Shown: in pieces, positions 39,209-63,142 of the stretch
Layout: each line of letters opens with the position of its first letter
Numbering within the stretch: the stretch's first letter is position 1
IMG/VR virus record: IMGVR_UViG_3300014494_000005
Span: 186,001-250,000 of that record
Length of the DNA stretch: 64,000 bases
Direction: 5' to 3' (one strand)
Made by a program: the position numbers and the translations under genes
The notes under the pieces: generated by a model
Told to the model about the DNA's origin: nothing
Database searches by the model: none
Seen by the model: the letters and a program-made list of their open reading frames with translations, nothing else

Positions 39209-40516
39209 CTATATTTTCTTTTTATCTTTAATACCATCAAATAACCATGCATTTGCTCCATATGGATTTAATGGTGATACACTATTAGGTGAAATCATTG
39301 GTCTGTTTTTTATATCAATTTTTCTTCCCATTTCATTTATATCATTATTGGTTATTATGGCATTAAGCATATGTTCAGTTATTCCTTTACTTTGTTTATA
39401 TCTCGCCATATCAAAATTAAGAACATACAAACCAATTGATAATCCCATAATTGAATCATCATGAAATGTACGTTTATGGTCTGCAACCCTATTACCAGCA
39501 ACAGTTACAAATGTTTTTAATTCTTCTAATAATCTAATTGACCTAATAATAACATCTTCTAAATGAATAGCTCTTTGTAATTCCAAAATAACTGATGCAC
39601 GATTATTACCTATAAAAAATCCAGGAATTAAATCAACATTAATTACTGTACCATCTGGCATTATTTTTTGACCTTTTTTTATATATCCTTGTAATCTATC
39701 TCTACTTGGTTTATGTGTTACTTCAGCATAATGAACATGTTCATTACCATAACCAAATTCTAATAATTTTTCAACACTTTGTACACCATAACCACCAGTA
39801 ATATCAACAACACAATATGCATTATTATATTTTCTACCATATTGATATGCTATTTCTGCAAGCATTTGTGGTGTAACTTTACCATAATATTCAGCAACTT
39901 GTTCAACTTTATGCCTTTTTATTTTAATTTTTTTTGTTTTACCACCTTTTTCTATTATTTTTTCTTCAATAGTTTCTATGGTTTTAAGTATATTTATTGT
40001 TGAATTATCTTCTCCATGACCCGGAGAGGCATCTAATGCCATAATATATTCTTCACCTGCTTCAGGGTCTTTCCAAATCCACATATTACCATCAACATAT
40101 TCTTGACGAATTGGAATTAGTTTTTCATTTTCTTCAATTCGTTTTAAATATTCTTTAGCAATAAAATTATCACCAGACCCCAAAAAAGAACAATTATGAT
40201 TTAAGATTCCATTTGCAAAATATTCACACCCTTCGCTATCAACAATATCATAAAATTCACAATCATTTATCGGTTCAACAGATTTAACATAAAAATCTCC
40301 TTCTGTTGTTGTTAAATATGCAACATTTGGTATTAATGATTTGGCATACATATCAACATTATTTGTAATGAATATATGGTCTTCACTAACAATAATTGAC
40401 ATATCATTTTCTAAAGTTATTTTTAATCCATTTTTTTTGTTCGATTTTTCCACTCCCAAAAAATCCACAAAATTTCCTGAATTATTTAATATTTCATATT
40501 CAGTATTAATTAACAT
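39209..40516 (-). CDS. terL: Terminase large subunit C-terminal fragment preceded by a C-intein (108 aa)
   Basis: IntC with SEDH block B, YDIV block F and ILNHN end; then CSFLGSG, ALDASPG and HDDSIMG nuclease motifs. Confidence 0.9.
   Translation of the reverse strand: MLINTEYEILNNSGNFVDFLGVEKSNKKNGLKITLENDMSIIVSEDHIFITNNVDMYAKSLIPNVAYLTTTEGDFYVKSVEPINDCEFYDIVDSEGCEYFANGILNHNCSFLGSGDNFIAKEYLKRIEENEKLIPIRQEYVDGNMWIWKDPEAGEEYIMALDASPGHGEDNSTINILKTIETIEEKIIEKGGKTKKIKIKRHKVEQVAEYYGKVTPQMLAEIAYQYGRKYNNAYCVVDITGGYGVQSVEKLLEFGYGNEHVHYAEVTHKPSRDRLQGYIKKGQKIMPDGTVINVDLIPGFFIGNNRASVILELQRAIHLEDVIIRSIRLLEELKTFVTVAGNRVADHKRTFHDDSIMGLSIGLYVLNFDMARYKQSKGITEHMLNAIITNNDINEMGRKIDIKNRPMISPNSVSPLNPYGANAWLFDGIKDKKKI
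40193..40516 (-). mobile_element. Split intein C-fragment (108 aa)
   Basis: MLINTEYEIL...FANGILNHN followed by Cys. Confidence 0.9.
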
Positions 40517-41670
40517 TGTAAAAATTTAACACATTTATTAATGATTTCATTATTTTTATTATTTCTATTATATTCTTCTGAAGTTACAAACATAATTTCA
40601 AATCCCATATCTTTCAATATGGAATATCTAATATCATCAATATCATTCGAATGCCAATAAGTACCGTTATATTCAATAACTTTATTGTTTTGTTTAAAAT
40701 CTAACATCATTACTGTTTTATCATAATTAAATTTTTCTGGTATTCTTAATACAAATTCTTTATTTAATTCGGTAAAATATATATTATTCTTATTATCTAT
40801 ATTATCATATATATTCCAAAACAATTCTTGAGAAATTTTACTATATCTATTTGCTTTTAATATTGATAATTTATTCATTTTAATATTTACATGTTCCTTA
40901 TATTTTATAATTCCTAATTCAGTACCAAATTTACGTTGAAACCATTCAATACTATTTGTTTTATTTATTTTAACATTTTCTTTTCGTTCATTATAATAAT
41001 AATTCCAATTATCACAATATGTTTTTTTAAACCAATTAATTGATGGATATTTGGGTTCACATTTTCCACAAATAATACTAAATTCACCCTTATTTATTCT
41101 CCAAAATTTTAATACATTATGCTTGTGACAATAAATATCAATATTATTAATTAATATATATAATCTCATTGATAATTTATTTAAATTTTTATTAAGTAAA
41201 TTCAAATGAGATGTATAGTATAATAAACTTAAATATAATTTTTTATCATCTCTTAATAATTTTCTATTTCCAGATTTTCCATAATAAATTTTATATTTAT
41301 TTTTTAATAAATTTATTGTTTCTATTTTAGAATACAATTCAACAATTTTCGATAATTCATCATTACATAAATCCCATTGTTTTTTTGCTGCATTTAAATT
41401 ATATTTCTTAAAATCGCATAATTTTGAGTCATAAATCATTAATTTGTTATCAATCTTAATTTTGTTAATGTCACCATTATATTTTTGTAAAAATAAAATT
41501 TTTGCTGGTAATTTTTTGTTTGACGGATATATTTGAATTTCCTTAGTATATTCGTTAATATATTTTAATAGATTTGGAAACAGCTTATTAAAATGTGCAA
41601 CACCGCCCATAATACTAAAATTTTTTATATTTACATTATTTAAATTTTTAATTAATATTTCTTTTTTCAT
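40510..41670 (-). CDS. Vsr-like homing endonuclease between the split-intein halves
   Basis: SKISQELFW...LDFK...VIEYNGTYWH C-terminal nuclease; its stop overlaps the IntC start. Confidence 0.75.
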   Translation of the reverse strand: MKKEILIKNLNNVNIKNFSIMGGVAHFNKLFPNLLKYINEYTKEIQIYPSNKKLPAKILFLQKYNGDINKIKIDNKLMIYDSKLCDFKKYNLNAAKKQWDLCNDELSKIVELYSKIETINLLKNKYKIYYGKSGNRKLLRDDKKLYLSLLYYTSHLNLLNKNLNKLSMRLYILINNIDIYCHKHNVLKFWRINKGEFSIICGKCEPKYPSINWFKKTYCDNWNYYYNERKENVKINKTNSIEWFQRKFGTELGIIKYKEHVNIKMNKLSILKANRYSKISQELFWNIYDNIDNKNNIYFTELNKEFVLRIPEKFNYDKTVMMLDFKQNNKVIEYNGTYWHSNDIDDIRYSILKDMGFEIMFVTSEEYNRNNKNNEIINKCVKFLQC

Positions 41671-41681
41671 ATTATATTTTA

Positions 41682-42878
41682 TTATAAATACTCACAAGAA
41701 TTATTTTGTTCATTAAGTTTATCATAAAATTTAAAAATTTCTAATGTTTCAATAATACCAGTTTTTTTATTTTTAATTGTAATTAATGAATCTTTTCCAA
41801 CGCACATAAGTTCCTGCGCTATCTTACGCATATCACCATTGGCATTACGAATTTGTTCTTCAAACCAAGGACTACTTGCTTCCCAGCCATCGTCCATCAT
41901 TTTAATTCTCTGTTCCTTACTCCAATTTGTATCAATTATTTTATTTTCAGTGGTTTTACCTTTATTTTTTAGCCAAACCAATTCTTTATTATAACGAGGG
42001 TCATTATACCACCATAATTCAACCGCTTTAAAATTATTTTTTCCTTTTCTTGCAGTATTAAATGTTTGATAAAAAACAGCATCAAGACCAGAAGGTGTAC
42101 TTACCATAATAGCATTACCACCAGTTTGTAATGTTGGCTGTGCTGAAGTCCAGAATTTATCACCCTTTTCTGCCCATGCTGTTTCATCCCAAAACAATAA
42201 AGTTGGTGTCATACCACGTAATGTTTTAGATGCAAATGCTCCTAATTTTGAATCATTATCATAATATTTCAATTTCTGTGTATCTTTTAAATTTTTTTCT
42301 GTATCTCTACCAGTTTTTGGTCTAAGCCATACAGGACAATTTTCAATAAAATCAACAACATCACTCATTAATTCATCACGTGCGGTTTCAAGTTTATCTG
42401 CAACAATAGCTACTTGTCTATTACGATTAAACATTACATACCAAGCAATATATGCACAAGTTGTTGTTGAAATACCTGCTTGACGATATTTATTAGCAAT
42501 AACAAAACGGTTTTCTAAATATGATTGAATTAATTCTTTTTGAAATTCAAATAATTTGAAAGGAACAATAAGACCAGCCTTACCTTGAGTTTGGTCAAAA
42601 ATTGTCAAATAAGTTTCAATAAAATAAATTGGATTTGAAGCACAACGAATAATTTCATCTTCTTGTTCATGAAGAGTTAATTCACTTGCTTTTTTTATTA
42701 GACCTGATTTTGCAACAATAATGGGTTCAATATTTCCAGATTTTTTTCGAAGTTCTTTTGCTAATTTTCTTTGTTCTTCTTTTTCTATTTCCTTTTGAGC
42801 ATCAAATGGAATGACTGGAATATGGTCAGGAAATTGTTCTTCTTCTTTATCTTTTAATTTGTCAATATCTTCAGACAT
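41682..42878 (-). CDS. terL: Terminase large subunit N-terminal ATPase fragment ending in an N-intein (40 aa)
   Basis: KYRQAGIST Walker A variant, LFWDETAW Walker B, STPSG; ...IAQELM then CVGKDSLITI...CEYL stop. Confidence 0.9.
   Translation of the reverse strand: MSEDIDKLKDKEEEQFPDHIPVIPFDAQKEIEKEEQRKLAKELRKKSGNIEPIIVAKSGLIKKASELTLHEQEDEIIRCASNPIYFIETYLTIFDQTQGKAGLIVPFKLFEFQKELIQSYLENRFVIANKYRQAGISTTTCAYIAWYVMFNRNRQVAIVADKLETARDELMSDVVDFIENCPVWLRPKTGRDTEKNLKDTQKLKYYDNDSKLGAFASKTLRGMTPTLLFWDETAWAEKGDKFWTSAQPTLQTGGNAIMVSTPSGLDAVFYQTFNTARKGKNNFKAVELWWYNDPRYNKELVWLKNKGKTTENKIIDTNWSKEQRIKMMDDGWEASSPWFEEQIRNANGDMRKIAQELMCVGKDSLITIKNKKTGIIETLEIFKFYDKLNEQNNSCEYL
41685..41804 (-). mobile_element. 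Split intein N-fragment (40 aa)
   Basis: Block A CVGKDSLITIK, then a stop after 40 residues. Confidence 0.85.
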
Positions 42879-52316: not shown

Positions 52317-52401
52317 CGGGGTGTAGGTCTGTAGTTGGTAGCAGTCCTGCCTTGGAAGCAGGTGGAGAAATCCCTCGCACGTTCGAACCGTGTCACCCCG
52401 A
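52317..52401 (+). tRNA. tRNA-Pro(TGG) with long variable arm
   Basis: cggggtg/caccccg acceptor; cctgc-CTTGGAA-gcagg; gga-gaaa-tcc variable hairpin; TTCGAAC T loop. Confidence 0.9.
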
Positions 52402-52473
52402 AGTGATTGATGTTAAATTACTTGCACGTAGTAATCACTGCATAACCAAAAGGTTAACTAAAAATTTAGCAAA

Positions 52474-52484
52474 GTTCTTTGAAA
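52474..52484 (+). promoter_or_regulatory. boxA-like antitermination motif GTTCTTTGAAA
   Basis: Resembles rRNA-operon boxA; preceded by small hairpins; similar motifs at 54522 and 57995. Confidence 0.5.
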
Positions 52485-52511
52485 TACCTAATAATAATAT
52501 ATAATTTATAT

Positions 52512-52585
52512 GGGATGATTGGTGTAGCGGTAGCATGCCAGATTGTGGTTCTGTCGGGGAGGTTTCAAATACCTCATCACCCCCA
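52512..52585 (+). tRNA. tRNA-His(GTG)
   Basis: Encoded G-1 opposite C73; TTGTGGT anticodon loop; gaggt-TTCAAAT-acctc T arm. Confidence 0.88.
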
Positions 52586-52642
52586 AATTCTCTAGTGATG
52601 TAATTAATATATTGCTGGTTTGAATATATTGAAACAATAAAT

Positions 52643-52729
52643 TGTTCTGTGATGAAATTGGCTAAACATGTCAGACTTTGACTCTGATGCTCTTTAGTGA
52701 GTTTGTAAGTTCGAATCTTACCAGAACAG
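52643..52729 (+). tRNA. tRNA-Gln(TTG) with long variable arm
   Basis: tgttctg/cagaaca acceptor, G73; tcaga-CTTTGAC-tctga; gctc-tttagt-gagt variable hairpin. Confidence 0.9.
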
Positions 52730-52778
52730 CAATATTAATTTTTTTAATTATCTTTGTTAAAATTTTAAATTAATTATT

Positions 52779-53732
52779 ATGTCATATAATTTATTTCTTG
52801 ATGACTTCCGCAGTCCTATCGATTCTTTTTATTATTTAGGGAATCCAATATATAATATTCTTGATTGGAAAATTGTACGAAATTATGATGAATTTGTGAA
52901 AACGATTCAAGAAAATGGTATTCCAGAAACTATTAGTTTTGACCATGATTTGGAAAATTCTGAAGAGTGGATGGATATTATTGGATATGAAGGAATTTAC
53001 ATGGTTTCAAATTTTGGTCGTATTTTAAGAACAAAAAAATCAAAAGGTACAACAGGTAATAATATTTTAACTCCATTAAAAAACATATCTGGATTATATG
53101 TAACATTATATAATTGCGGTAAAAATATACACAAAAAAATTCATAGATTAGTTTTAGAATCATTTATGGGTATTAATAATGAAAAATCACAAGTTAATCA
53201 TATTGATGGAAATAGATGGAATAATCATATTAATAATTTAGAGTGGTGTACATCATCTGAAAATATATGGCATTCACATAATGTATTATATAGAGATTTT
53301 TCTGCATATGGTGAAAACCATAAAAATAGTATGACAGTATCTCAATATGATATAAATAATAATCTAATTAATATTTATGGTTCAGTTAATGAAGCAGGAA
53401 GGCAATTAAATATTAGTTTTTCGAACATTGCAAAATGTGCTAGAGGTGAAAGAAAAATTGCTGGTGGATTTATTTGGAAATATGAAAATCTCAAAGTAAC
53501 AATAAATACAAAAATTTCACACATTGAATATAAAGATTATGCTAAGAATTTCTTTATACCTAAATATGAAGAAAAAACTGGTTATCATTGTGCTAAATGG
53601 TTAATAGATTATTGCATTGACAATAAATTAGAATTACCAAAAACAATTTTAATACACTCAATGAATCCAGTTGGAAGTCGAAATATTAAATCATTATTTG
53701 ATAGTTATTTCAAATCACTTAATTTATCTTAA
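52779..53732 (+). CDS. Cyclic-phosphate-processing receiver-like (cREC) protein with an in-frame NUMOD4-HNH endonuclease insert
   Basis: LFLDDFR..ISFDHDL N-half and EEKTGYHCAKWL..HSMNPVG C-half flank EEWMDIIGYEGIYMVSNFGR (NUMOD4), VNHIDGNRWNNHINNLEW (HNH) and a NUMOD1-like end. Confidence 0.7.
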   Translation: MSYNLFLDDFRSPIDSFYYLGNPIYNILDWKIVRNYDEFVKTIQENGIPETISFDHDLENSEEWMDIIGYEGIYMVSNFGRILRTKKSKGTTGNNILTPLKNISGLYVTLYNCGKNIHKKIHRLVLESFMGINNEKSQVNHIDGNRWNNHINNLEWCTSSENIWHSHNVLYRDFSAYGENHKNSMTVSQYDINNNLINIYGSVNEAGRQLNISFSNIAKCARGERKIAGGFIWKYENLKVTINTKISHIEYKDYAKNFFIPKYEEKTGYHCAKWLIDYCIDNKLELPKTILIHSMNPVGSRNIKSLFDSYFKSLNLS

Positions 53733-53735
53733 TTT

Positions 53736-54152
53736 TTATTTAACCCAAAATTTTCCTAATAATGTAATAATTGTGATTAGTATTGATATTCCCGCAACAA
53801 TGTATGCAATCATAGCATTTCCACCTGCTTTTATATTTTCAGATTTTTCGACTTTAATTGTAAGTGCATCAATTTTATCATTAGCATTTTTTAACAATAC
53901 TTCTGTCTCAATACGTGGCATTAATGTTCTCGACTGGTCACCAAGTTGTGCACGAAATTCATTAACACATTCAAAACGTTTTTCTGTTGCAACCTCTGCC
54001 TTATTAACAGCTAATTCCATTGCTTGATACCTTTGAGTTACACGTTCGTCTCTTTCAGCAAGCAATATTTTATAATGTTCATATTGATTTTTTAATACAA
54101 CATCATAATGCTCTTTAAGAGCTTCAAGCGTCCAAATTGTGTTATTTTCCAT
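53736..54152 (-). CDS. Coiled-coil protein with C-terminal TM helix (holin-like?)
   Basis: Long coiled coil ending in a hydrophobic helix. Confidence 0.5.
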   Translation of the reverse strand: MENNTIWTLEALKEHYDVVLKNQYEHYKILLAERDERVTQRYQAMELAVNKAEVATEKRFECVNEFRAQLGDQSRTLMPRIETEVLLKNANDKIDALTIKVEKSENIKAGGNAMIAYIVAGISILITIITLLGKFWVK

Positions 54153-54250
54153 TAATTTATTAGTGTTAGATATTTATTAGCCATTTAATGTTAATAAATA
54201 CTTTTTAGAACGTCTAAAAATATTGTATATAAAAAATAATTTAAAAAAAG

Positions 54251-54281
54251 TTTGTATATATTGTAACATTTTATATCTTTG
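54251..54281 (+). promoter_or_regulatory. Bacteroidota primary-sigma promoter for tRNA operon 2
   Basis: TTTG (54251-54) -N19- TATCTTTG (54274-81), followed by CA. Confidence 0.85.
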
Positions 54282-54321
54282 CAACGTATTTAGAATAAAA
54301 GAAACTATTTTTAATTTTAAA

Positions 54322-54414
54322 ATGATGAAAAAAGTACTCGACATATTGGTATCAGAGATGGCAGTTGTCCTATTATGGGCAGATGCAGAAGATACATTAT
54401 ATTCAGTCGGGTAA
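54322..54414 (+). CDS. Attenuator leader peptide 2, MMKKVLDILVSEMAVVLLWADAEDTLYSVG
   Basis: Codons cover every anticodon of the downstream operon; contains antiterminator strand CAGTCGGG (54404-11). Confidence 0.85.
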   Translation: MMKKVLDILVSEMAVVLLWADAEDTLYSVG

Positions 54415-54450
54415 TATTTATTACAAATAACACCTCCTTTCTTAAATGAA

Positions 54451-54486
54451 AAATCCCGACTGCTAAAATGGTCGGGATTTTTTTTT
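54451..54486 (+). terminator. Attenuator terminator 2
   Basis: aaatcccgac-tgctaaaatg-gtcgggattt plus T run; CCCGACTG (54455-62) is complementary to 54404-54411. Confidence 0.9.
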
Positions 54487-54490
54487 AGAA

Positions 54491-54520
54491 TTTGTAACAA
54501 ATAAAATTTTTCTTTGTATA
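54491..54520 (+). promoter_or_regulatory. Variant phage promoter TTTGTAACA-N15-TGTATA just after the attenuator
   Basis: One mismatch to the motif seen exactly at four other sites. Confidence 0.45.
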
Positions 54521-54521
54521 C

Positions 54522-54534
54522 TGTTCTTTGACAT
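54522..54534 (+). promoter_or_regulatory. boxA-like motif TGTTCTTTGACAT
   Basis: Resembles rRNA-operon boxA; 12 nt before the first tRNA. Confidence 0.55.
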
Positions 54535-54545
54535 GTTGGAAATTC

Positions 54546-54615
54546 GTTCTCGTAGTATAATGGTTAGTATGTATCACTGTCTATGATAAGGAGGGGTTCG
54601 AATCCCACGGGGACG
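54546..54615 (+). tRNA. tRNA-Asp(GTC)
   Basis: gttctcg/cggggac acceptor, G73; tatca-CTGTCTA-tgata; T stem imperfect. Confidence 0.85.
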
Positions 54616-54686
54616 GCAATGATTATTAATGTGTTATAATAATTATCTGTTATATTAAATTATATTAAAAATGAAATAATTAATTT

Positions 54687-54770
54687 GCTGCATTATACAA
54701 GTGGTTAAAGTGGCTTGCCCTTCAAGCAAGTGCCGAAAGGCTTCGCAGGATTCGAATTCCTCATGCAGTA
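54687..54770 (+). tRNA. tRNA-Glu(TTC) with C33 and long variable arm
   Basis: gctgcat/atgcagt acceptor; cttgc-CCTTCAA-gcaag; gcc-gaaa-ggc variable hairpin. Confidence 0.8.
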
Positions 54771-54797
54771 CTGAAATATAAATTTAAAATTTAAATT

Positions 54798-55187
54798 ATG
54801 AAAAATTTGTATATTAATGCAACTCACAGTACACCCGCAGTTTTTTTTAATATTAATAAAGGTATTCTTACAATAACAGGAAAATCATTTCCTGAGAATT
54901 CCTCAATGTTTTTTGATGATATTGATAAAGCATTAGATGAATTTATTAAAGAACATTCTAATGTTGATTTAACAATTACTTGTGAATTTGAATATATTAA
55001 TTCATTATCAAATAAAGCAGTTTTTAATATATTAGAAAAAGCAGCAAAATCTCTTAATAATGTTATAGTTGTTTGGAAATATGAAGAAAACGATGAAGAT
55101 ATGAAAGAGCAGGGAGAATTTTTTGAAACATCTTTTAAAACTAAAATTCATTTTCATTATAAACATTTTTTAATACAACCAGAATGA
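54798..55187 (+). CDS. SiaC-family (DUF1987) regulatory phosphoprotein
   Basis: T.STP.V.F....G.L.I.GKSFPEN...F; EYINSLS; VWKYEENDEDM.E.GE.F. Confidence 0.8.
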   Translation: MKNLYINATHSTPAVFFNINKGILTITGKSFPENSSMFFDDIDKALDEFIKEHSNVDLTITCEFEYINSLSNKAVFNILEKAAKSLNNVIVVWKYEENDEDMKEQGEFFETSFKTKIHFHYKHFLIQPE

Positions 55188-55192
55188 TAAAT

Positions 55193-55265
55193 GCTCGGTT
55201 CGTCTAATGGTTAGGACAAAAGATTCTCATTCTTTTAAATATGTTTTCGATTAACATACCGAGTA
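55193..55265 (+). tRNA. tRNA-Glu(CTC)
   Basis: gctcggt/accgagt acceptor; aaaga-TTCTCAT-tcttt; atgtt-TTCGATT-aacat. Confidence 0.88.
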
Positions 55266-55599: not shown

Positions 55600-55674
55600 G
55601 TGAATGTAGCCAAATGGTTAATAGGCAATCGATTTAGACTCGAAAATTTGCTGGTTCGACTCCAGTCATTCACA
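55600..55674 (+). tRNA. tRNA-Leu(TAG) with short variable loop
   Basis: gtgaatg/cattcac acceptor; tcga-TTTAGAC-tcga; ~5-nt variable region. Confidence 0.8.
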
Positions 55675-55740
55675 CAAAGATATTTTTTAAAAAACAATAA
55701 TCTTTCCTAATATTTCATGTATTTATATTAAATATAATAT

Positions 55741-56472: not shown

Positions 56473-56548
56473 GGGGTATGGGACTGCTAGGGTTGGTCAT
56501 CTCGTCTGCACCGAGAAAATCAGGAGGATTCGAATTCCTCATGCTCCA
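56473..56548 (+). tRNA. tRNA-Ala(TGC) with C33
   Basis: ggggtat/atgctcc acceptor with G3:U70 and A73; tctcg-TCTGCAC-cgaga. Confidence 0.85.
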
Positions 56549-56587
56549 CATTATCAAATAGTTATATAGATAATCACAATAAAATAT

Positions 56588-56661
56588 GGCACAGTACTCC
56601 AATTGGTAGAGAGAAACGGCTTAAACCCGTTAAAGTGTGAATTCGAATTTCACTTGTGCTA
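56588..56661 (+). tRNA. tRNA-Leu(TAA) with short variable loop
   Basis: ggcacag/ttgtgct acceptor; aacgg-CTTAAAC-ccgtt; 5-nt variable region. Confidence 0.82.
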
Positions 56662-56683
56662 CAAAATAAATTAATTATAATAT

Positions 56684-58009: not shown

Positions 58010-58372
58010 GGGGATGAATGGATTTGACTGTATGTAGAAAAATGATGTAAGCAAGTAGTAGTTGAATCGGACTACTTTTAAAAAGGTTCAAAACAATAAA
58101 TGCAGAAGACATTATGTCTATTCCTACTTCCTTGACAAAAGGAAATAGCGTATTTGTAAAGAGTGCTGAACTTGCAATTGCGTAATAGGAAAAAAATAAA
58201 CAGCAAAAAACTTCCAAGTCAGAAGGGAAGTAAAAACAATTCTGGACAGTTTTGTAGTTGTTCTGGAAAAATACAATTAACATTTTGCTGATTTAGGAAA
58301 ATCAAATAAACTTGTAGAAAACTTATTAATCACATTGCAACACCGGGGAATCGATGCCCCGCATCTCCACCA
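58010..58372 (+). ncRNA. ssrA: tmRNA; tag reading frame AEDIMSIPTSLTKGNSVFVKSAELAIA (58102-58182, stops TAA TAG)
   Basis: GGGGATG...GGATTTGAC 5' end pairs with CATCTCC-A-CCA 3' end with G3:U; ATAAAT-GCA resume context; hydrophobic Ala-ending tag. Confidence 0.93.
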
Positions 58373-58961: not shown

Positions 58962-59048
58962 GGCGAAGTGATGAAATAGGTAGTACATGCAGGTCTTAAA
59001 AACCTGTGAACAGTAATGTTCGTGTGGGTTCGATTCCCATCTTCGCTA
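58962..59048 (+). tRNA. tRNA-Leu(TAA), canonical class II
   Basis: ggcgaag/cttcgct acceptor; caggt-CTTAAAA-acctg; long variable arm. Confidence 0.93.
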
Positions 59049-59092
59049 CGAATAAATTAATTAAAGTATTTATATAAAAACTTATAATAACA

Positions 59093-60503: not shown

Positions 60504-60574
60504 AGCGATGTCATTCAACGGTAGGATATCTCTCTCATAAGGAGCAAATACGAGTCCGATTCTCGTCATCGCTA
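60504..60574 (+). tRNA. tRNA-Met(CAT), probably elongator (Ile2 not excluded)
   Basis: agcgatg/catcgct acceptor with G2-C71, C3-G70, A73; CTCATAA loop; T loop TCCGATT. Confidence 0.8.
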
Positions 60575-61185: not shown

Positions 61186-62049
61186 ATGGTTTATAATTAT
61201 AATAAACAACATTGTTGGCAATATGATATTAGGTTAAATAATTTAACCAATGATTTAAAACAAGCAAATATAACTCTTGATGAATCGAAAAATTTAAAAG
61301 TATCTGATTTTAAATTTCAATTTGAAGAAAAAGATTTATGTTTTCAAGAAATTAAAAGTTTTATTGAAAAACATGAATGGTTGGGTAGAGTAAGTTTATA
61401 TCCAACACATATTTTTACTGCACGATATAATGGAATTTTAGCAGGTGTAGTAATTATTGATATGCCAAGTGTGTTTTCGAAATTATTGGGAGAAGAAACA
61501 AAAAAGATTGAAAGATTAATAAGCAGAGGTGCTTGTATTAGTTGGTCGCCCAAAAATTTAGGTAGTTCTTTGATTATGTTTGCAATTAATTGGATGGTAA
61601 AAAATACACAATATCGTTTATTTGTTGCTTATTCAGATGTTGAAGCTAAAGAATTAGGCACAATTTATCAAGCATGTAATTTTTATTATTTGGGTAAGAA
61701 ATCTGGTGCAAAAAATCAATATAAAATTGAAACCGGAAGATGGGTATCCGATAGATATTTTAGAGCAAGGTCTGTTTATAAAAGACTTGCAAAAGAAAAT
61801 GAAATTATTTGGCATGATGAATGGCAAAACGGAGATAGTGTAATGTTTGATAAAATGCCGGAAGAAATTGCATTACAAATAAGAAAACTTTCAAAGGACT
61901 ATTTATTGTCCTGTGAAAGTAGAGAAATGAAACCAAAACATAAATATGCATATGTTTTGGGTAAAAATAATACTGAAACAAAAAAATTAAGAAGAATATT
62001 TATAGAAAGAAACAAAATTTATTCATATCCAAAAGAAAGGGGAAATTAA
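61186..62049 (+). CDS. Mom-like GNAT-fold DNA modification protein
   Basis: LAGVV, RLISRGAC..PKNLGS.LI, VAYSD...ELGTIYQACNFYYLG, KHKYAY.L. Confidence 0.7.
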   Translation: MVYNYNKQHCWQYDIRLNNLTNDLKQANITLDESKNLKVSDFKFQFEEKDLCFQEIKSFIEKHEWLGRVSLYPTHIFTARYNGILAGVVIIDMPSVFSKLLGEETKKIERLISRGACISWSPKNLGSSLIMFAINWMVKNTQYRLFVAYSDVEAKELGTIYQACNFYYLGKKSGAKNQYKIETGRWVSDRYFRARSVYKRLAKENEIIWHDEWQNGDSVMFDKMPEEIALQIRKLSKDYLLSCESREMKPKHKYAYVLGKNNTETKKLRRIFIERNKIYSYPKERGN

Positions 62050-62050
62050 A

Positions 62051-63142
62051 GTGAAATTACTTGAAAAAGTTGATTGGAAAATATTAAATAACTATATTGA
62101 TAATAGTCTCATTATAGCAAATAAACACCCAAATTATGAAATTTGGATTTTGAACTATTCAGTAAAAGCTCAATCAAAAAAATTTTGGGACGAATATACT
62201 ATGTCTTGTCGTGGATTGGTTGTTGATGTTGAAGGTAATATTTTAGCACGTCCATTTATGAAATTTAAAAATTATGAAGAATATGATTCTTCTGAAATTG
62301 ATTTATATATGACTCAAGAATTTGAAATATTTGAAAAAGTCGATGGTTCACCTATTATCTTATTTTACTATGCACCACGTATGGAATGGATTGTGGCAAG
62401 TAGAGGTTCATTTATTTCAGAACAATGTATTGAAGCACAAAAAATGATTGATATTAACATATACGATAAATTGAATAAAAATTGTACTTTTTTATTTGAA
62501 GTATTATATCCAGAAAATCGTATTGTTGTTGATTATGGTGATAGAAGAGAACTTGTATTACTTGGAAGAATTGTAACTGAAACCGGAATTGAAGCATATT
62601 ATAATGAATTAGTTGCACAATATTCAAATTATTTTTCAATTGTTAAGAAATATGATATAAATAATATTAAAAATCTTAAAGATTTACAAAAACTTGAAGA
62701 AGAAAATCGTGAAGGATTTGTTGTAAGATTTAAAGATGGTTTTAGAGTTAAAGTTAAGTTTGCAGAATATTGTAGATTACATGTTATTTTAACAAATGTT
62801 TCAAACTTAACAATTTGGGAACATTTAATGAATAATTATGATTTTGATTCATTACTTGACAGAGTTCCAGATGAATTTTATAATTGGTTAAAGAAAACAA
62901 CAAAAATTATACAAACTGATTTTAATGAAATTGAAAGATTGTCATTAAAAGAATTTGTAAGAATTTACCATGTTAATGGAATTACAAATCGTAGAGAATT
63001 TGCTATGGAAGCATTAAAGACAGAATATCGTTCAATATTGTTTAAGTTATATGACAAAAAAAACTACGATGATATTATTTGGAAACAAGTAAGACCCGTT
63101 TACAGCAAACCATTTAAAGATGGTTTTGAATATAGTGTTTAA
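62051..63142 (+). CDS. RNA ligase (T4 Rnl1-like)
   Basis: CRGLVVD..ILARPF.KF.NY; FEKVDGS motif I; FLFEV; EGFVV...KVK. Confidence 0.88.
   Translation: MKLLEKVDWKILNNYIDNSLIIANKHPNYEIWILNYSVKAQSKKFWDEYTMSCRGLVVDVEGNILARPFMKFKNYEEYDSSEIDLYMTQEFEIFEKVDGSPIILFYYAPRMEWIVASRGSFISEQCIEAQKMIDINIYDKLNKNCTFLFEVLYPENRIVVDYGDRRELVLLGRIVTETGIEAYYNELVAQYSNYFSIVKKYDINNIKNLKDLQKLEEENREGFVVRFKDGFRVKVKFAEYCRLHVILTNVSNLTIWEHLMNNYDFDSLLDRVPDEFYNWLKKTTKIIQTDFNEIERLSLKEFVRIYHVNGITNRREFAMEALKTEYRSILFKLYDKKNYDDIIWKQVRPVYSKPFKDGFEYSV

What the first reader, a model, noticed from the sequence alone, without database searches (positions are those of the whole stretch)
52317..54770. Class II-type long variable arms on Pro, Gln and Glu tRNAs
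tRNA-Pro (gga-gaaa-tcc), tRNA-Gln (gctc-tttagt-gagt) and tRNA-Glu-TTC (gcc-gaaa-ggc) each carry a paired variable arm. In bacteria long arms are normally limited to Leu, Ser, Tyr and Sec. Possible roles: evading nucleases that read tRNA shape, or altered aminoacylation (e.g. Leu/Ser scaffolds given new anticodons).
Basis: partly seen in the sequence, partly recalled or inferred. Interest (0 to 1): 0.7.

Follow-up and report, generated by a model that had tools for sequence, protein, structure and literature searches.

The report
Phage Pro/Gln/Glu tRNAs with extra arm
A 349-kb peat-soil jumbo phage and dozens of its relatives carry proline, glutamine and glutamate tRNAs built with the extra stem-loop that bacteria normally reserve for leucine, serine and tyrosine tRNAs, and evolution has actively preserved that arm, probably as part of the phage-host fight over tRNAs.

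Summary
ARAGORN and the Rfam tRNA model find tRNA-Pro(UGG) at 52317-52401, tRNA-Gln(UUG) at 52643-52729 and tRNA-Glu(UUC) at 54687-54770.

The window lies in a 348,923-bp, 26% GC jumbo phage from peat and permafrost with about 38 tRNAs. Related phage contigs yielded 21 distinct long-arm Gln, 12 Glu and 20 Pro tRNAs. Their cloverleaves are about 99% paired, and the extra arm is kept by compensatory substitutions.

Metatranscriptome contigs run colinearly through the arms, so no splicing is seen. The acceptor ends match the normal-size Pro, Gln and Glu tRNAs of the same phages, not Leu, Ser or Tyr. These tRNAs read the phage's dominant codons: CCA 58%, CAA 91%, GAA 95%.

The cores are partly class-II-like. 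The Gln D arm resembles Leu, and the relatives' Pro resembles Ser. The window's Pro, however, is a Pro body with inserted pieces.

The most likely reading is cognately charged decoders whose shape was remodelled under tRNA-targeted conflict. That function is inferred, not shown. The same clade also has Leu tRNAs without the arm, and C33 in many Glu tRNAs. I found no description of this in the searchable literature.

The parts
52317..52401 (+). tRNA-Pro(UGG), 85 nt to the discriminator A73. Layout: acceptor 52317-52323 / 52394-52400 (C1-G72); U8 A9; 3-nt insertion GGU at 52326-52328; 4-bp D stem 52329-52332 / 52341-52344; anticodon 52353-52355 with A37 rather than G37; T arm 52377-52393.
   Evidence: ARAGORN. 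Rfam tRNA 40.2 bits, with the CM alignment showing both insertions. Best match to the home-made Pro profile once the V region is removed.
52363..52376 (+). Variable region of tRNA-Pro: U, hairpin GGA-GAAA-UCC (52364-52373), then CUC.
   Evidence: Sequence. The CM treats it as a 12-nt insertion. The hairpin appears in the MFE fold. GGA/UCC is kept in L129 with a different loop.
52513..52584 (+). tRNA-His(GUG), normal size, lying between the long-arm Pro and Gln (context).
52643..52729 (+). tRNA-Gln(UUG), 87 nt to the discriminator G73. Features: U1-A72 and G2-C71; 3-bp D stem 52652-52654 / 52667-52669 with an 12-nt loop; anticodon 52678-52680.
   Evidence: ARAGORN. Rfam 53.8 bits. Family alignment A1 is 98.8% paired with covariation in all helices.
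52688..52704 (+). Variable region of tRNA-Gln: U, hairpin GCUC-UUUAGU-GAGU (52689-52702), then UU. This is a Leu-like layout (1 nt / stem-loop / 2 nt, with A15-U48 possible).
54687..54770 (+). tRNA-Glu(UUC), 84 nt to the discriminator A73. Features: G1.U72 and C2-G71; 3-bp D stem; anticodon loop CCUUCAA (C33 at 54720, anticodon 54721-54723); T stem with a bulged or mismatched first pair.
   Evidence: ARAGORN at -ps90. Rfam 34.5 bits, but not returned. Family alignment A2 is 98.8% paired.
54731..54744 (+). Variable region of tRNA-Glu: U, hairpin GCC-GAAA-GGC (54732-54741), then UUC.
   Evidence: Two of the three arm pairs change on both sides among relatives, with a near-constant GAAA loop.
55600..55675 (+). 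tRNA-Leu(UAG) of class-I size (76 nt, 5-nt variable loop, A73). It is the mirror image of the finding.
   Evidence: (58.9 bits).
56588..56662 (+). tRNA-Leu(UAA) of class-I size (75 nt). A normal long-arm Leu(UAA) lies at 58962-59049.
   Evidence: (51.7 bits). Its acceptor signature is shared with the long Leu(UAA) tRNAs.
62051..63142 (+). T4 Rnl1-type RNA ligase gene inside the tRNA array. This is context: a tRNA-repair function.
   Evidence: Pfam RNA_lig_T4_1, E = 5.7e-21.

Best explanation
The three genes are genuine, transcribed and evolutionarily maintained phage tRNAs. Each combines the anticodon and acceptor-end identity marks of Pro, Gln or Glu with a class-II-like core, meaning a stem-loop in the variable region. 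In Gln and Glu the core also has a 3-bp D stem with a large D loop.

Shown:
- The cloverleaf and the arm are under structural selection in a whole clade of AT-rich jumbo phages.
- The arm stays in the RNA-library contigs.
- The phage encodes no GluRS/GlnRS-type or ProRS-type synthetase.
- These are the phage's only tRNAs for its dominant CCA, CAA and GAA codons.

Inferred:
- Host ProRS, GlnRS (or GluRS plus amidotransferase) and GluRS charge them with the cognate amino acid, and they serve in phage translation.
- The arm arose more than once. One route was insertion into a cognate body (the window's Pro). Another was remoulding or recombination of Leu- or Ser-type tRNAs whose anticodon and acceptor end were converted (Gln here, and the Pro of relatives).

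Most likely purpose, inferred and the least certain step: the changed shape makes phage tRNAs differ from the host's class-I-shaped Pro, Gln and Glu tRNAs. tRNA-directed nucleases or toxins that read the tRNA core or variable region would then bind them poorly. These could be host defences, or a phage-made host-shutoff activity. Translation of the phage's main codons would survive. The mirror-image arm-less Leu tRNAs and the C33 Glu tRNAs in the same arrays fit the same logic.
For: - Real tRNAs with a paired arm.
- Structure maintained across 21, 11 and 16 distinct relatives, with 98.8-99.5% of cells paired. None of 500 shuffles reached the observed pairing or covariation score, and pairing falls to 32-50% when partners are slid.
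- The arm helices are kept, with two-sided changes.
- RNA-library contigs are colinear through Pro/His/Gln (X15 52331-53668, X18 52580-52813) and through Glu (X15 54685-55235, X16 54608-54829), with no joint at the arms.
- Acceptor-end signatures equal those of the normal-size paralogs and differ from Leu, Ser and Tyr.
- No phage PF00749 or PF00587 synthetase was found.
- The phage has no normal-size Pro(UGG), Gln(UUG) or Glu(UUC), and its codon use is CCA 58%, CAA 91%, GAA 95%.
- Signs of tRNA conflict in the context: an Rnl1-type RNA ligase and a cREC domain gene in the array, a tmRNA, a CCA-adding enzyme, and non-U33 anticodon loops in 45 of 518 distinct clade tRNAs.
- In larger relatives the same anticodon occurs in both a long and a normal-size copy.
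- Precedents: phage tRNAs escape anticodon nucleases through sequence changes (PMC10264068), and the MenT3 toxin uses the long variable loop as a determinant (PMC11541572).
Against: - No charging, nuclease or expression-level experiment exists. The host is unknown, so host tRNAs and defences cannot be compared.
- RNA-library contigs may be precursors or DNA carry-over (caveat stated). Mature ends and CCA were not seen.
- In E. coli, GluRS identity depends on the D-helix and short variable loop (my knowledge, not tested here). A long arm could therefore hinder cognate charging of Glu.
- Pro has A37 instead of the usual G37.
- Body similarity of many family members is to Ser, Leu or Tyr tRNAs, and A73 is also the Leu/Tyr discriminator.
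- The arm sits far from the anticodon loop, where most known anticodon nucleases cut.
- Arms come and go among relatives (Cys 76-89 nt, Thr 75-88 nt). That pattern could also fit weak or lineage-specific selection.
Confidence: 0.5

Rival explanations
1. Missense (mis-charged) tRNAs. The class-II core makes LeuRS, SerRS or TyrRS charge them, so that Pro, Gln and Glu codons are partly read as Leu, Ser or Tyr. This is what nematode nev-tRNAs and bacterial allo-tRNAs do.
For: - D arms are closest to Ser, Tyr and Leu tRNAs.
- With the anticodon masked and the V region removed, the window's Gln scores 37.4 bits on Leu against 36.9 on Gln. The window's Glu scores best, weakly, on Ser. 16 of 20 long-arm Pro tRNAs score best on Ser.
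- Pro and Glu have A73, the Leu/Tyr discriminator.
- Pro has A37, as in Ser(UGA)-type loops.
Against: - Pairs 1:72 to 3:70 and N73 match the cognate normal-size paralogs and not Leu, Ser or Tyr. Ser tRNAs of the clade are G-C, G-C, A-U with G73, and none of the three has that.
- They are the phage's only tRNAs for codons that make up 58-95% of Pro, Gln and Glu codons. Mis-charging would scramble the phage's own proteome.
- The window's Pro is unambiguously Pro-like (29.6 against 8.3 bits).
- The 3-bp arms are short for SerRS (my knowledge).
Confidence: 0.12
2. Structural or neutral explanation. The hairpins are tolerated insertions, or stabilisers of AT-rich, weakly paired tRNA cores, with no role in conflict.
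For: - The arms are short (3-4 bp) with stable GNRA or UUCG-type loops.
- Arm presence varies among relatives for Cys, Thr, Trp and Val.
- The phage tRNAs are AT-rich and several MFE folds are weak.
Against: - Compensatory changes and near-complete pairing across phages whose terminase is only 72-90% identical.
- The whole core is remodelled, not only extended by a hairpin.
- The reverse change, loss of the arm in Leu, occurs in the same genomes. That is not expected from a stabilising role.
Confidence: 0.2
3. Self-marking handle. The arm is a binding site for a phage-encoded factor that treats phage tRNAs differently from host tRNAs. Candidates are the 1032-aa CCA-adding enzyme, the RNA ligase or repair proteins, or a modification enzyme.
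For: - The Gln arm sequence (ACC...GGU followed by UU) is more conserved than pairing alone requires.
- The Glu loop is almost always GAAA.
- The phage encodes a CCA-adding enzyme with long extra regions and an Rnl1-type ligase in the array.
Against: - Arm sequences and lengths differ completely between isotypes (3 bp to 7-9 bp).
- No candidate partner was shown to co-occur with the arms, and no binding test was made.
Confidence: 0.1
4. The arms are introns or processing spacers that are removed, or the genes are decaying pseudo-tRNAs or non-translational RNAs. One non-translational role would be amino-acid donors for the neighbouring Mom-like transferase.
For: - Glu is weak for the generic tRNA model (34.5 bits) and has C33 and an imperfect T stem.
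- A Mom-family gene lies in the array, and Mom uses Gly-tRNA (PMC13219725).
Against: - No joint at any arm in four RNA libraries.
- The hairpins are 10-14 nt, with no known bacterial splicing signal.
- All helices covary, which pseudogenes would not show.
- Mom is specific for Gly-tRNA (PMC13219725), and only 1 of 16 distinct Gly tRNAs in the clade and none in the five relatives or the window's genome is long-armed.
Confidence: 0.05

Closest known systems
Class II (type II) bacterial tRNAs: Leu, Ser, Tyr, Sec
   Same: A stem-loop in the variable region between positions 44 and 48. Gln and Glu also have a 3-bp D stem, a large D loop and a possible 15-48 Levitt pair. The Gln layout (1 nt / stem / 2 nt) is like Leu. 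The relatives' Pro layout (1 nt / 7-9 bp / 1 nt) is like Ser.
   Different: The anticodons and acceptor-end identity marks are those of Pro, Gln and Glu. The arms of the window's three are only 3-4 bp. The window's Pro keeps a class-I 4-bp D stem.
Nematode nev-tRNAs and eukaryotic nov-tRNAs (PMC3333845; Hamashima et al. 2016, cited in PMC5389517)
   Same: V-arm-bearing tRNAs whose anticodons belong to class-I amino acids.
   Different: Those are Leu- or Ser-type tRNAs with a changed anticodon and are charged with Leu in vitro. Here the acceptor end is also that of the anticodon's amino acid, the carrier is a phage, and these tRNAs read the genome's main codons.
Bacterial allo-tRNAs and selC* tRNA-Cys (PMC5389517)
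   Same: A long V-arm on tRNAs with many non-Ser anticodons. They are found in soil and peat metagenomes and in some phages.
   Different: allo-tRNAs have 8/4 or 9/3 acceptor/T stems, tRNA-Sec-like D arms and G73/U73 serine identity. The tRNAs here are 7/5 (Glu: 7 plus a 5-bp T stem with a bulge) with cognate-type ends.
Phage tRNAs that escape tRNA-targeting defences (PMC10264068, PMC11464382, PMC11555353)
   Same: Phage-encoded isoacceptors that deviate from the norm, lie in large tRNA arrays and sit beside RNA-repair genes. The C33 Glu loops in this clade are the same kind of change.
   Different: The known cases rely on anticodon-loop or anticodon-stem substitutions. A change of the whole tRNA class (gain or loss of the variable arm) has not been described, and it is not shown here to confer escape.
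Alloacceptor tRNA remoulding / tRNA gene recruitment (known mainly from organelles; my knowledge)
   Same: A duplicated tRNA of one isotype acquires the anticodon and identity of another. This fits the Ser-like body of the relatives' Pro and the Leu-like D arm of Gln.
   Different: Here the change crosses the class I / class II boundary, and the result is kept in many phages. The window's Pro did not arise this way.

Membership tests
Class II tRNA architecture | Variable region of 10 nt or more that forms a stem-loop between the anticodon and T arms | tested here: met
   The variable regions are 14, 17 and 14 nt with 3-4 bp hairpins. The helices are maintained in relatives.
Class II tRNA architecture | Class-II-type D arm (3-bp stem, enlarged loop) | tested here: inconclusive
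   Gln and Glu have 3 covarying D pairs and 11-13 nt loops, with nearest D arms Ser, Tyr and Leu. The window's Pro has a canonical 4-bp D stem plus a 3-nt insertion before it.
Class II tRNA architecture | In bacteria the isotype is Leu, Ser, Tyr or Sec | tested here: not met
   The anticodons are UGG, UUG and UUC, and the acceptor ends match Pro, Gln and Glu paralogs.
allo-tRNA (PMC5389517) | 8/4 or 9/3 acceptor/T-stem composition | tested here: not met
   Seven acceptor pairs and five T pairs covary in Gln and in the relatives' Pro. Glu has 7 acceptor pairs plus 5 T pairs with a bulge. ARAGORN's eighth pair in the window's Pro uses flanking bases and is not in the CM alignment.
allo-tRNA (PMC5389517) | Serine identity (G73/U73 with a long arm) and a tRNA-Sec-like D arm (long stem, tetraloop) | tested here: not met
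   Pro and Glu have A73. Gln has G73 but with U1-A72. The D loops are 8-13 nt.
nev-/nov-tRNA type (Leu-charged V-arm tRNA with a foreign anticodon) | Leu-type body including the acceptor end and A73 | tested here: not met
   Only the D arm of Gln is Leu-like (17 of 21 positions identical to the phage's Leu(UAA)). The acceptor ends differ from Leu.
nev-/nov-tRNA type (Leu-charged V-arm tRNA with a foreign anticodon) | Charged with leucine | not testable with these tools
   This needs aminoacylation assays.
Functional tRNA-Pro / Gln / Glu isoacceptors | Isotype-specific acceptor and discriminator marks shared with canonical paralogs | tested here: met
   Pro has C1-G72 and A73. Gln has U1-A72 and G2-C71. 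Glu has G1.U72, C2-G71 and A73. Each set is found in both the long and the normal-size copies.
Functional tRNA-Pro / Gln / Glu isoacceptors | Canonical anticodon loop (U33; G37 in tRNA-Pro) | tested here: not met
   The window's Glu has C33 (CCUUCAA). The long-arm Pro has A37 (CUUGGAA), whereas 27 of 38 normal-size Pro(UGG) tRNAs have G37. Gln is canonical.
Functional tRNA-Pro / Gln / Glu isoacceptors | Cognate aminoacylation and use on the ribosome | not testable with these tools
   This is inferred from identity marks, codon use and the absence of other phage copies.
tRNA intron | The insert is removed from the mature RNA | tested here: not met
   RNA-library contigs are colinear and no joint is seen at the arms. 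The caveat is that assembled contigs can miss rare spliced forms.
Counter-defence phage tRNAs (PMC10264068) | A phage-encoded copy that resists a host tRNA nuclease cleaving the host counterpart | not testable with these tools
   The host and its defences are unknown. Only the context is suggestive.

The most novel reading that the evidence does not exclude
A clade of soil and peat jumbo phages carries a 'shape-swapped' tRNA set. Class-I amino acids (Pro, Gln, Glu, and in relatives Thr, Trp, Val, Cys, Met, Ile, Asn, Lys, His) are served by tRNAs rebuilt with a class-II variable arm. Leu (and perhaps Ser) is also served by arm-less copies. In the largest genomes these often sit beside a normally shaped copy of the same anticodon. 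This would be a systematic strategy to keep cognate charging while escaping, or exploiting, factors that recognise tRNA class. In effect it would be a natural, partly orthogonal tRNA set.
Probability: 0.3. Interest if true: 0.85.

Novelty: new variant of a known kind. Interest (0 to 1): 0.72.

Why it matters
The division of tRNAs into class I and class II, with the long arm confined to Leu, Ser, Tyr and Sec in bacteria, is a textbook regularity and a major identity signal for synthetases.

Here that boundary is crossed repeatedly and in both directions, and the result is kept by selection in tRNAs that appear to retain their cognate identity. If confirmed, four things follow.
- ProRS, GlnRS and GluRS, EF-Tu and the ribosome tolerate class-II cores on these isotypes in nature.
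- There is a new axis, the shape of the whole core, along which phage tRNAs may escape or exploit tRNA-directed immunity and toxins.
- Clear evolutionary examples become available of tRNA identity conversion across classes.
- Ready-made scaffolds become available for engineering orthogonal tRNAs.

It also warns annotators that length-based or isotype-model-based tRNA calls will mislabel or miss such genes. Glu(UUC) here is missed by default ARAGORN and by Rfam's filtered search.

Tried and rejected
- **Alternative genetic code.** The genome has a tRNA(CUA), but stop-to-stop ORF coverage is practically the same with TAG as stop or as sense (0.57-0.98 per 20 kb). I kept code 11.
- **First pattern scans.** An exact-pattern scan for the window's Pro type in viral contigs found nothing. 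The first Gln scan found only 100% identical copies, which are useless for covariation.
- **Terminase flanks.** Flanks of terminase relatives rarely reached the tRNA arrays (11 tRNAs in 80 loci). I therefore searched whole records by handle and used degenerate patterns.
- **Deposited phages.** blastn of the region against deposited phage genomes matched only homing-endonuclease pieces and no tRNA.
- **Bacterial and archaeal genomes.** The scan gave chance or partial matches (a normal 74-nt Peregrinibacteria tRNA-Gln, a Halovenus locus and a Chitinophagales locus without a tRNA) and phage contigs binned into MAGs.
- **Single-sequence folding.** It is not decisive. The Gln and the G002-type Pro MFE structures are not cloverleaves.
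- **Home-made isotype profiles.** The first version, with the V region left in, favours class-II models simply because of length. I repeated it with the V region removed and use only that version.
- **Rfam re-scans.** The gathering-mode scan and the narrow scan did not return Glu(UUC), although one search did. I treat Glu as supported mainly by the comparative data.
- **Mom hypothesis.** The idea that the odd tRNAs feed the neighbouring Mom-like transferase was dropped, because Mom is specific for Gly-tRNA (PMC13219725).
- **Further Pfam scans.** More ORFs between the tRNA blocks gave no further tRNA enzyme.
- **Literature.** Eight searches found no description of such phage tRNAs.

Full report
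**What the window is**

The window is bases 186,001-250,000 of a 348,923-bp virus record that CheckV rates as complete. It has 23-32% GC and a T4-type large terminase. It is found in peat, permafrost and bioreactor metagenomes. ORF coverage fits the standard code. ARAGORN finds 33 tRNA genes at default settings and 38 at a relaxed setting, in a few blocks between about 238 and 283 kb. Rfam also finds a tmRNA inside the window at 58010-58372.

**The observation**

- tRNA-Pro(UGG) at 52317-52401, 40.2 bits.
- tRNA-Gln(UUG) at 52643-52729, 53.8 bits.
- tRNA-Glu(UUC) at 54687-54770, 34.5 bits. ARAGORN finds it only at -ps90, and two other Rfam runs miss it.

The covariance-model alignment of Pro shows two insertions into an otherwise canonical tRNA. 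One is 3 nt (GGU) between A9 and the D stem. The other is 12 nt in the variable region.

The sequence is not an assembly accident. Five other IMG/VR contigs are identical over up to 12 kb, and 14 DNA runs hold it completely.

**Relatives and covariation**

The terminase has many relatives of 70-90% identity in IMG/VR, including complete genomes of 327 and 363 kb with 55-59 tRNA matches. I took their tRNA arrays and scanned viral contigs with degenerate patterns taken from the first orthologues. This gave 21 distinct long-arm Gln(UUG), 12 Glu and 20 Pro(UGG) sequences.

- **Gln** (A1, 21 sequences): 98.8% of cells are paired and 18 of 24 pairs change on both sides. The arm helix is 94.7% paired, although it is mostly a conserved ACC...GGU followed by UU.
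- **Glu** (A2, 11 sequences): 98.8% paired. Two of the three arm pairs show compensatory changes (A-U/G-C/C-G and C-G/U-A), and the loop is nearly always GAAA.
- **Pro** of most relatives (A4, 16 sequences): 99.5% paired. The arm is 7 bp and 99.1% paired, with GC<->CG and CG<->GC/UA exchanges.

In all three, none of 500 shuffles reached the observed pairing or covariation score, and sliding the partners by 1-3 columns drops pairing to 32-50%.

The window's own Pro type is rarer. One further distinct sequence (L129:202-291) keeps GGA/UCC and the 3-nt insertion but has a different loop. So the arms are real and selected, not chance hairpins.

**Are the arms spliced out?**

Four metatranscriptome runs from peat hold the region. 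Their contigs run colinearly through Pro, His and Gln (52331-53668; 52580-52813) and through Glu (54685-55235; 54608-54829). There are no gaps or joints at the arms. The tool warns that DNA may be present in RNA libraries and that contigs drop rare forms. This is therefore absence of evidence for splicing, not proof of mature full-length tRNA.

**Whose tRNAs are they? Acceptor end against body**

I tabulated pairs 1:72, 2:71 and 3:70 and the discriminator for all distinct tRNAs of the clade.
- Long-arm Gln has U1-A72 and G2-C71, like the normal-size Gln tRNAs.
- Long-arm Glu has G1.U72, C2-G71 and A73, like normal-size Glu.
- Long-arm Pro has C1-G72 and A73, like normal-size Pro.
- The same holds for long-arm Trp (A1-U72, G73), Thr (G-C, C-G, U73) and Cys (U73).
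- Leu, Ser (G-C, G-C, A-U, G73) and Tyr (G-C x3, A73) are different.

The cores tell another story. The D-arm nearest neighbours of long-arm Pro, Gln and Glu are Ser, Tyr and Leu tRNAs. The window's Gln D arm is nearly the same as that of the phage's own Leu(UAA).

I then scored against home-made profiles with the anticodon masked and the variable region cut out.
- The window's Pro is plainly a Pro body (29.6 bits, next profile 8.3).
- The window's Gln ties between Leu (37.4) and Gln (36.9).
- The window's Glu is weak on every profile, while 8 of 12 family members prefer Glu.
- 16 of 20 long-arm Pro tRNAs, the 7-bp-arm type of the relatives, prefer Ser.

The arm was therefore acquired by more than one route. 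One route is insertion into a cognate tRNA. The other is conversion of class-II tRNAs by changing the anticodon and the acceptor end.

**Function in decoding**

The window's phage has no normal-size Pro(UGG), Gln(UUG), Glu(UUC) or Thr(UGU). The long-arm genes are its only copies. They match its dominant codons: CCA 58% of Pro, CAA 91% of Gln, GAA 95% of Glu and ACA 53% of Thr. No GluRS/GlnRS-type or ProRS-type synthetase domain is encoded, so host enzymes must charge them. The phage does encode a CCA-adding enzyme of 1032 aa, which fits the lack of encoded CCA. Mis-charging these tRNAs would damage the phage's own proteins. This is why I rank the missense reading low, despite the class-II-like cores.

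**Host comparison**

A scan of one genome per prokaryotic species for the Gln family found only phage contigs that had been binned into MAGs. One of them is the 363-kb relative itself, deposited as a scaffold of a 'Candidatus Paceibacterota' MAG. That MAG's own contigs (36-40% GC) carry ordinary tRNAs. Pro is 72-74 nt, Gln 73-74 nt and Glu 73-76 nt, and long arms occur only on Leu and Ser. This is a bin-mate, not a proven host, but it is the expected bacterial pattern.

**Context and likely purpose**

The array is interleaved with homing endonucleases, one of them inserted in a cREC (cyclic-phosphate RNA-end processing) domain gene. It also holds a T4 Rnl1-type RNA ligase, a Mom-family transferase and the tmRNA.

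In the clade, 45 of 518 distinct tRNAs lack U33. Sixteen of 29 Glu(UUC) tRNAs, including the window's, have the loop CCUUCAA. The long-arm Pro tRNAs have A37 instead of G37.

The same genomes hold Leu(UAG), Leu(UAA) and other Leu tRNAs of class-I size, with Leu-type ends. In the largest relative eight anticodons occur in both a long and a short form.

Published work gives precedents. Phage tRNAs escape anticodon nucleases through sequence changes (PMC10264068; PARIS, PMC11464382; retron Ec78, PMC11555353). At least one bacterial toxin, MenT3, uses the long variable loop as a recognition handle (PMC11541572).

I therefore think the most likely purpose is to give phage tRNAs a shape that tRNA-directed enzymes do not expect while keeping cognate charging. 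This last step is inference. Neutral or stabilising insertions, or a handle for a phage factor, remain live alternatives.

**Comparison with known kinds**

- These are not allo-tRNAs, which have 8/4 or 9/3 stems and serine identity (PMC5389517).
- They are not nev- or nov-tRNAs, which are Leu-type tRNAs with foreign anticodons charged with Leu (PMC3333845).
- A 2020 review of non-canonical tRNAs lists nothing like them (PMC7609411).
- Eight full-text searches found no report of class-II arms on phage Pro, Gln or Glu tRNAs.

I class the finding as a new variant of a known kind.

**Verdict**

The function is open but testable.

Noticed in passing
window 55600-55675 and 56588-56662: There are tRNA-Leu(UAG) and tRNA-Leu(UAA) genes of class-I size (76 and 75 nt, 5-nt variable loop, A73), with Rfam scores of 58.9 and 51.7 bits. 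A normal long-arm Leu(UAA) lies at 58962-59049. In the clade, 29 of 70 distinct Leu tRNAs lack the arm.
   Followed up: partly
window 54719-54725 (anticodon loop of Glu-UUC): The loop is CCUUCAA, so position 33 is C rather than the near-universal U. The same loop occurs in 16 of 29 distinct Glu(UUC) tRNAs of the clade, both long and normal-size, and 45 of 518 distinct tRNAs lack U33.
   Followed up: partly
window 52351-52357: The long-arm tRNA-Pro has A37 (loop CUUGGAA), whereas most normal-size Pro(UGG) tRNAs of the clade have G37 (UUUGGGA). It would therefore lack the m1G37 site typical of tRNA-Pro.
   Followed up: no
window 52326-52328: There is a 3-nt insertion (GGU) between A9 and the D stem of tRNA-Pro. 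It is conserved as GCU in the only other relative of this type, L129:202-291.
   Followed up: partly
window 58010-58372: A phage-encoded tmRNA lies inside the tRNA array (Rfam RF00023, 68.6 bits, full length).
   Followed up: no
window 52779-53732: This ORF lies between tRNA-Gln and tRNA-Asp. It matches the cREC_REC domain (cyclic-phosphate RNA-end processing) in two stretches, with an HNH/NUMOD homing-endonuclease module in between. It looks like an endonuclease inserted in-frame into an RNA-repair-associated gene.
   Followed up: no
window 61186-62049 and 62051-63142: A Mom-family transferase and a T4 Rnl1-type RNA ligase sit side by side within the tRNA array. Mom of phage Mu uses Gly-tRNA to modify adenine in DNA (PMC13219725).
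   Followed up: partly
G000:C1:268386-268463 (outside the window): There is a tRNA with anticodon CUA (an amber suppressor, called 'Pyl' by ARAGORN) in a genome whose ORFs fit the standard code equally well with or without TAG as a stop. Relatives G001 and G002 also carry one.
   Followed up: partly
G000:C1:261779-261863 and 282699-282791 (complement), outside the window: The same phage has two further long-arm tRNAs of class-I isotypes: Thr(UGU), 85 nt, and a second His(GUG), 93 nt. Relatives add Val, Trp, Cys, Met, Ile, Asn and Lys.
   Followed up: partly
L259 (JBAZIW010000001.1, 362,763 bp): The complete genome of a related jumbo phage (the same length as IMGVR_UViG_3300029288_000055) is deposited as scaffold 1 of a 1.3-Mb 'Candidatus Paceibacterota' MAG. 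This is either a binning error or a hint at a candidate-phyla-radiation host.
   Followed up: partly
window 39209-42878 (minus strand): The large terminase (Terminase_6N match in 41682-42878) is followed by separate ORFs, one with a weak intein-splicing-domain match. The terminase gene may be interrupted by an intein or a mobile insertion.
   Followed up: no
window 56473-56549 and 60504-60574: Two tRNAs are missed by default ARAGORN. Ala(UGC) is found only at -ps90 and shares 20 identical bases with the T arm and acceptor of Glu(UUC). A CAU-anticodon tRNA scores 52.9 bits in Rfam.
   Followed up: no
G000:C1:91436-94534 (minus strand; L277:937-4035): This 1032-aa protein has a CCA-adding tRNA nucleotidyltransferase core (residues about 211-576) and long unassigned N- and C-terminal regions. 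A LAGLIDADG endonuclease gene lies next to it.
   Followed up: partly
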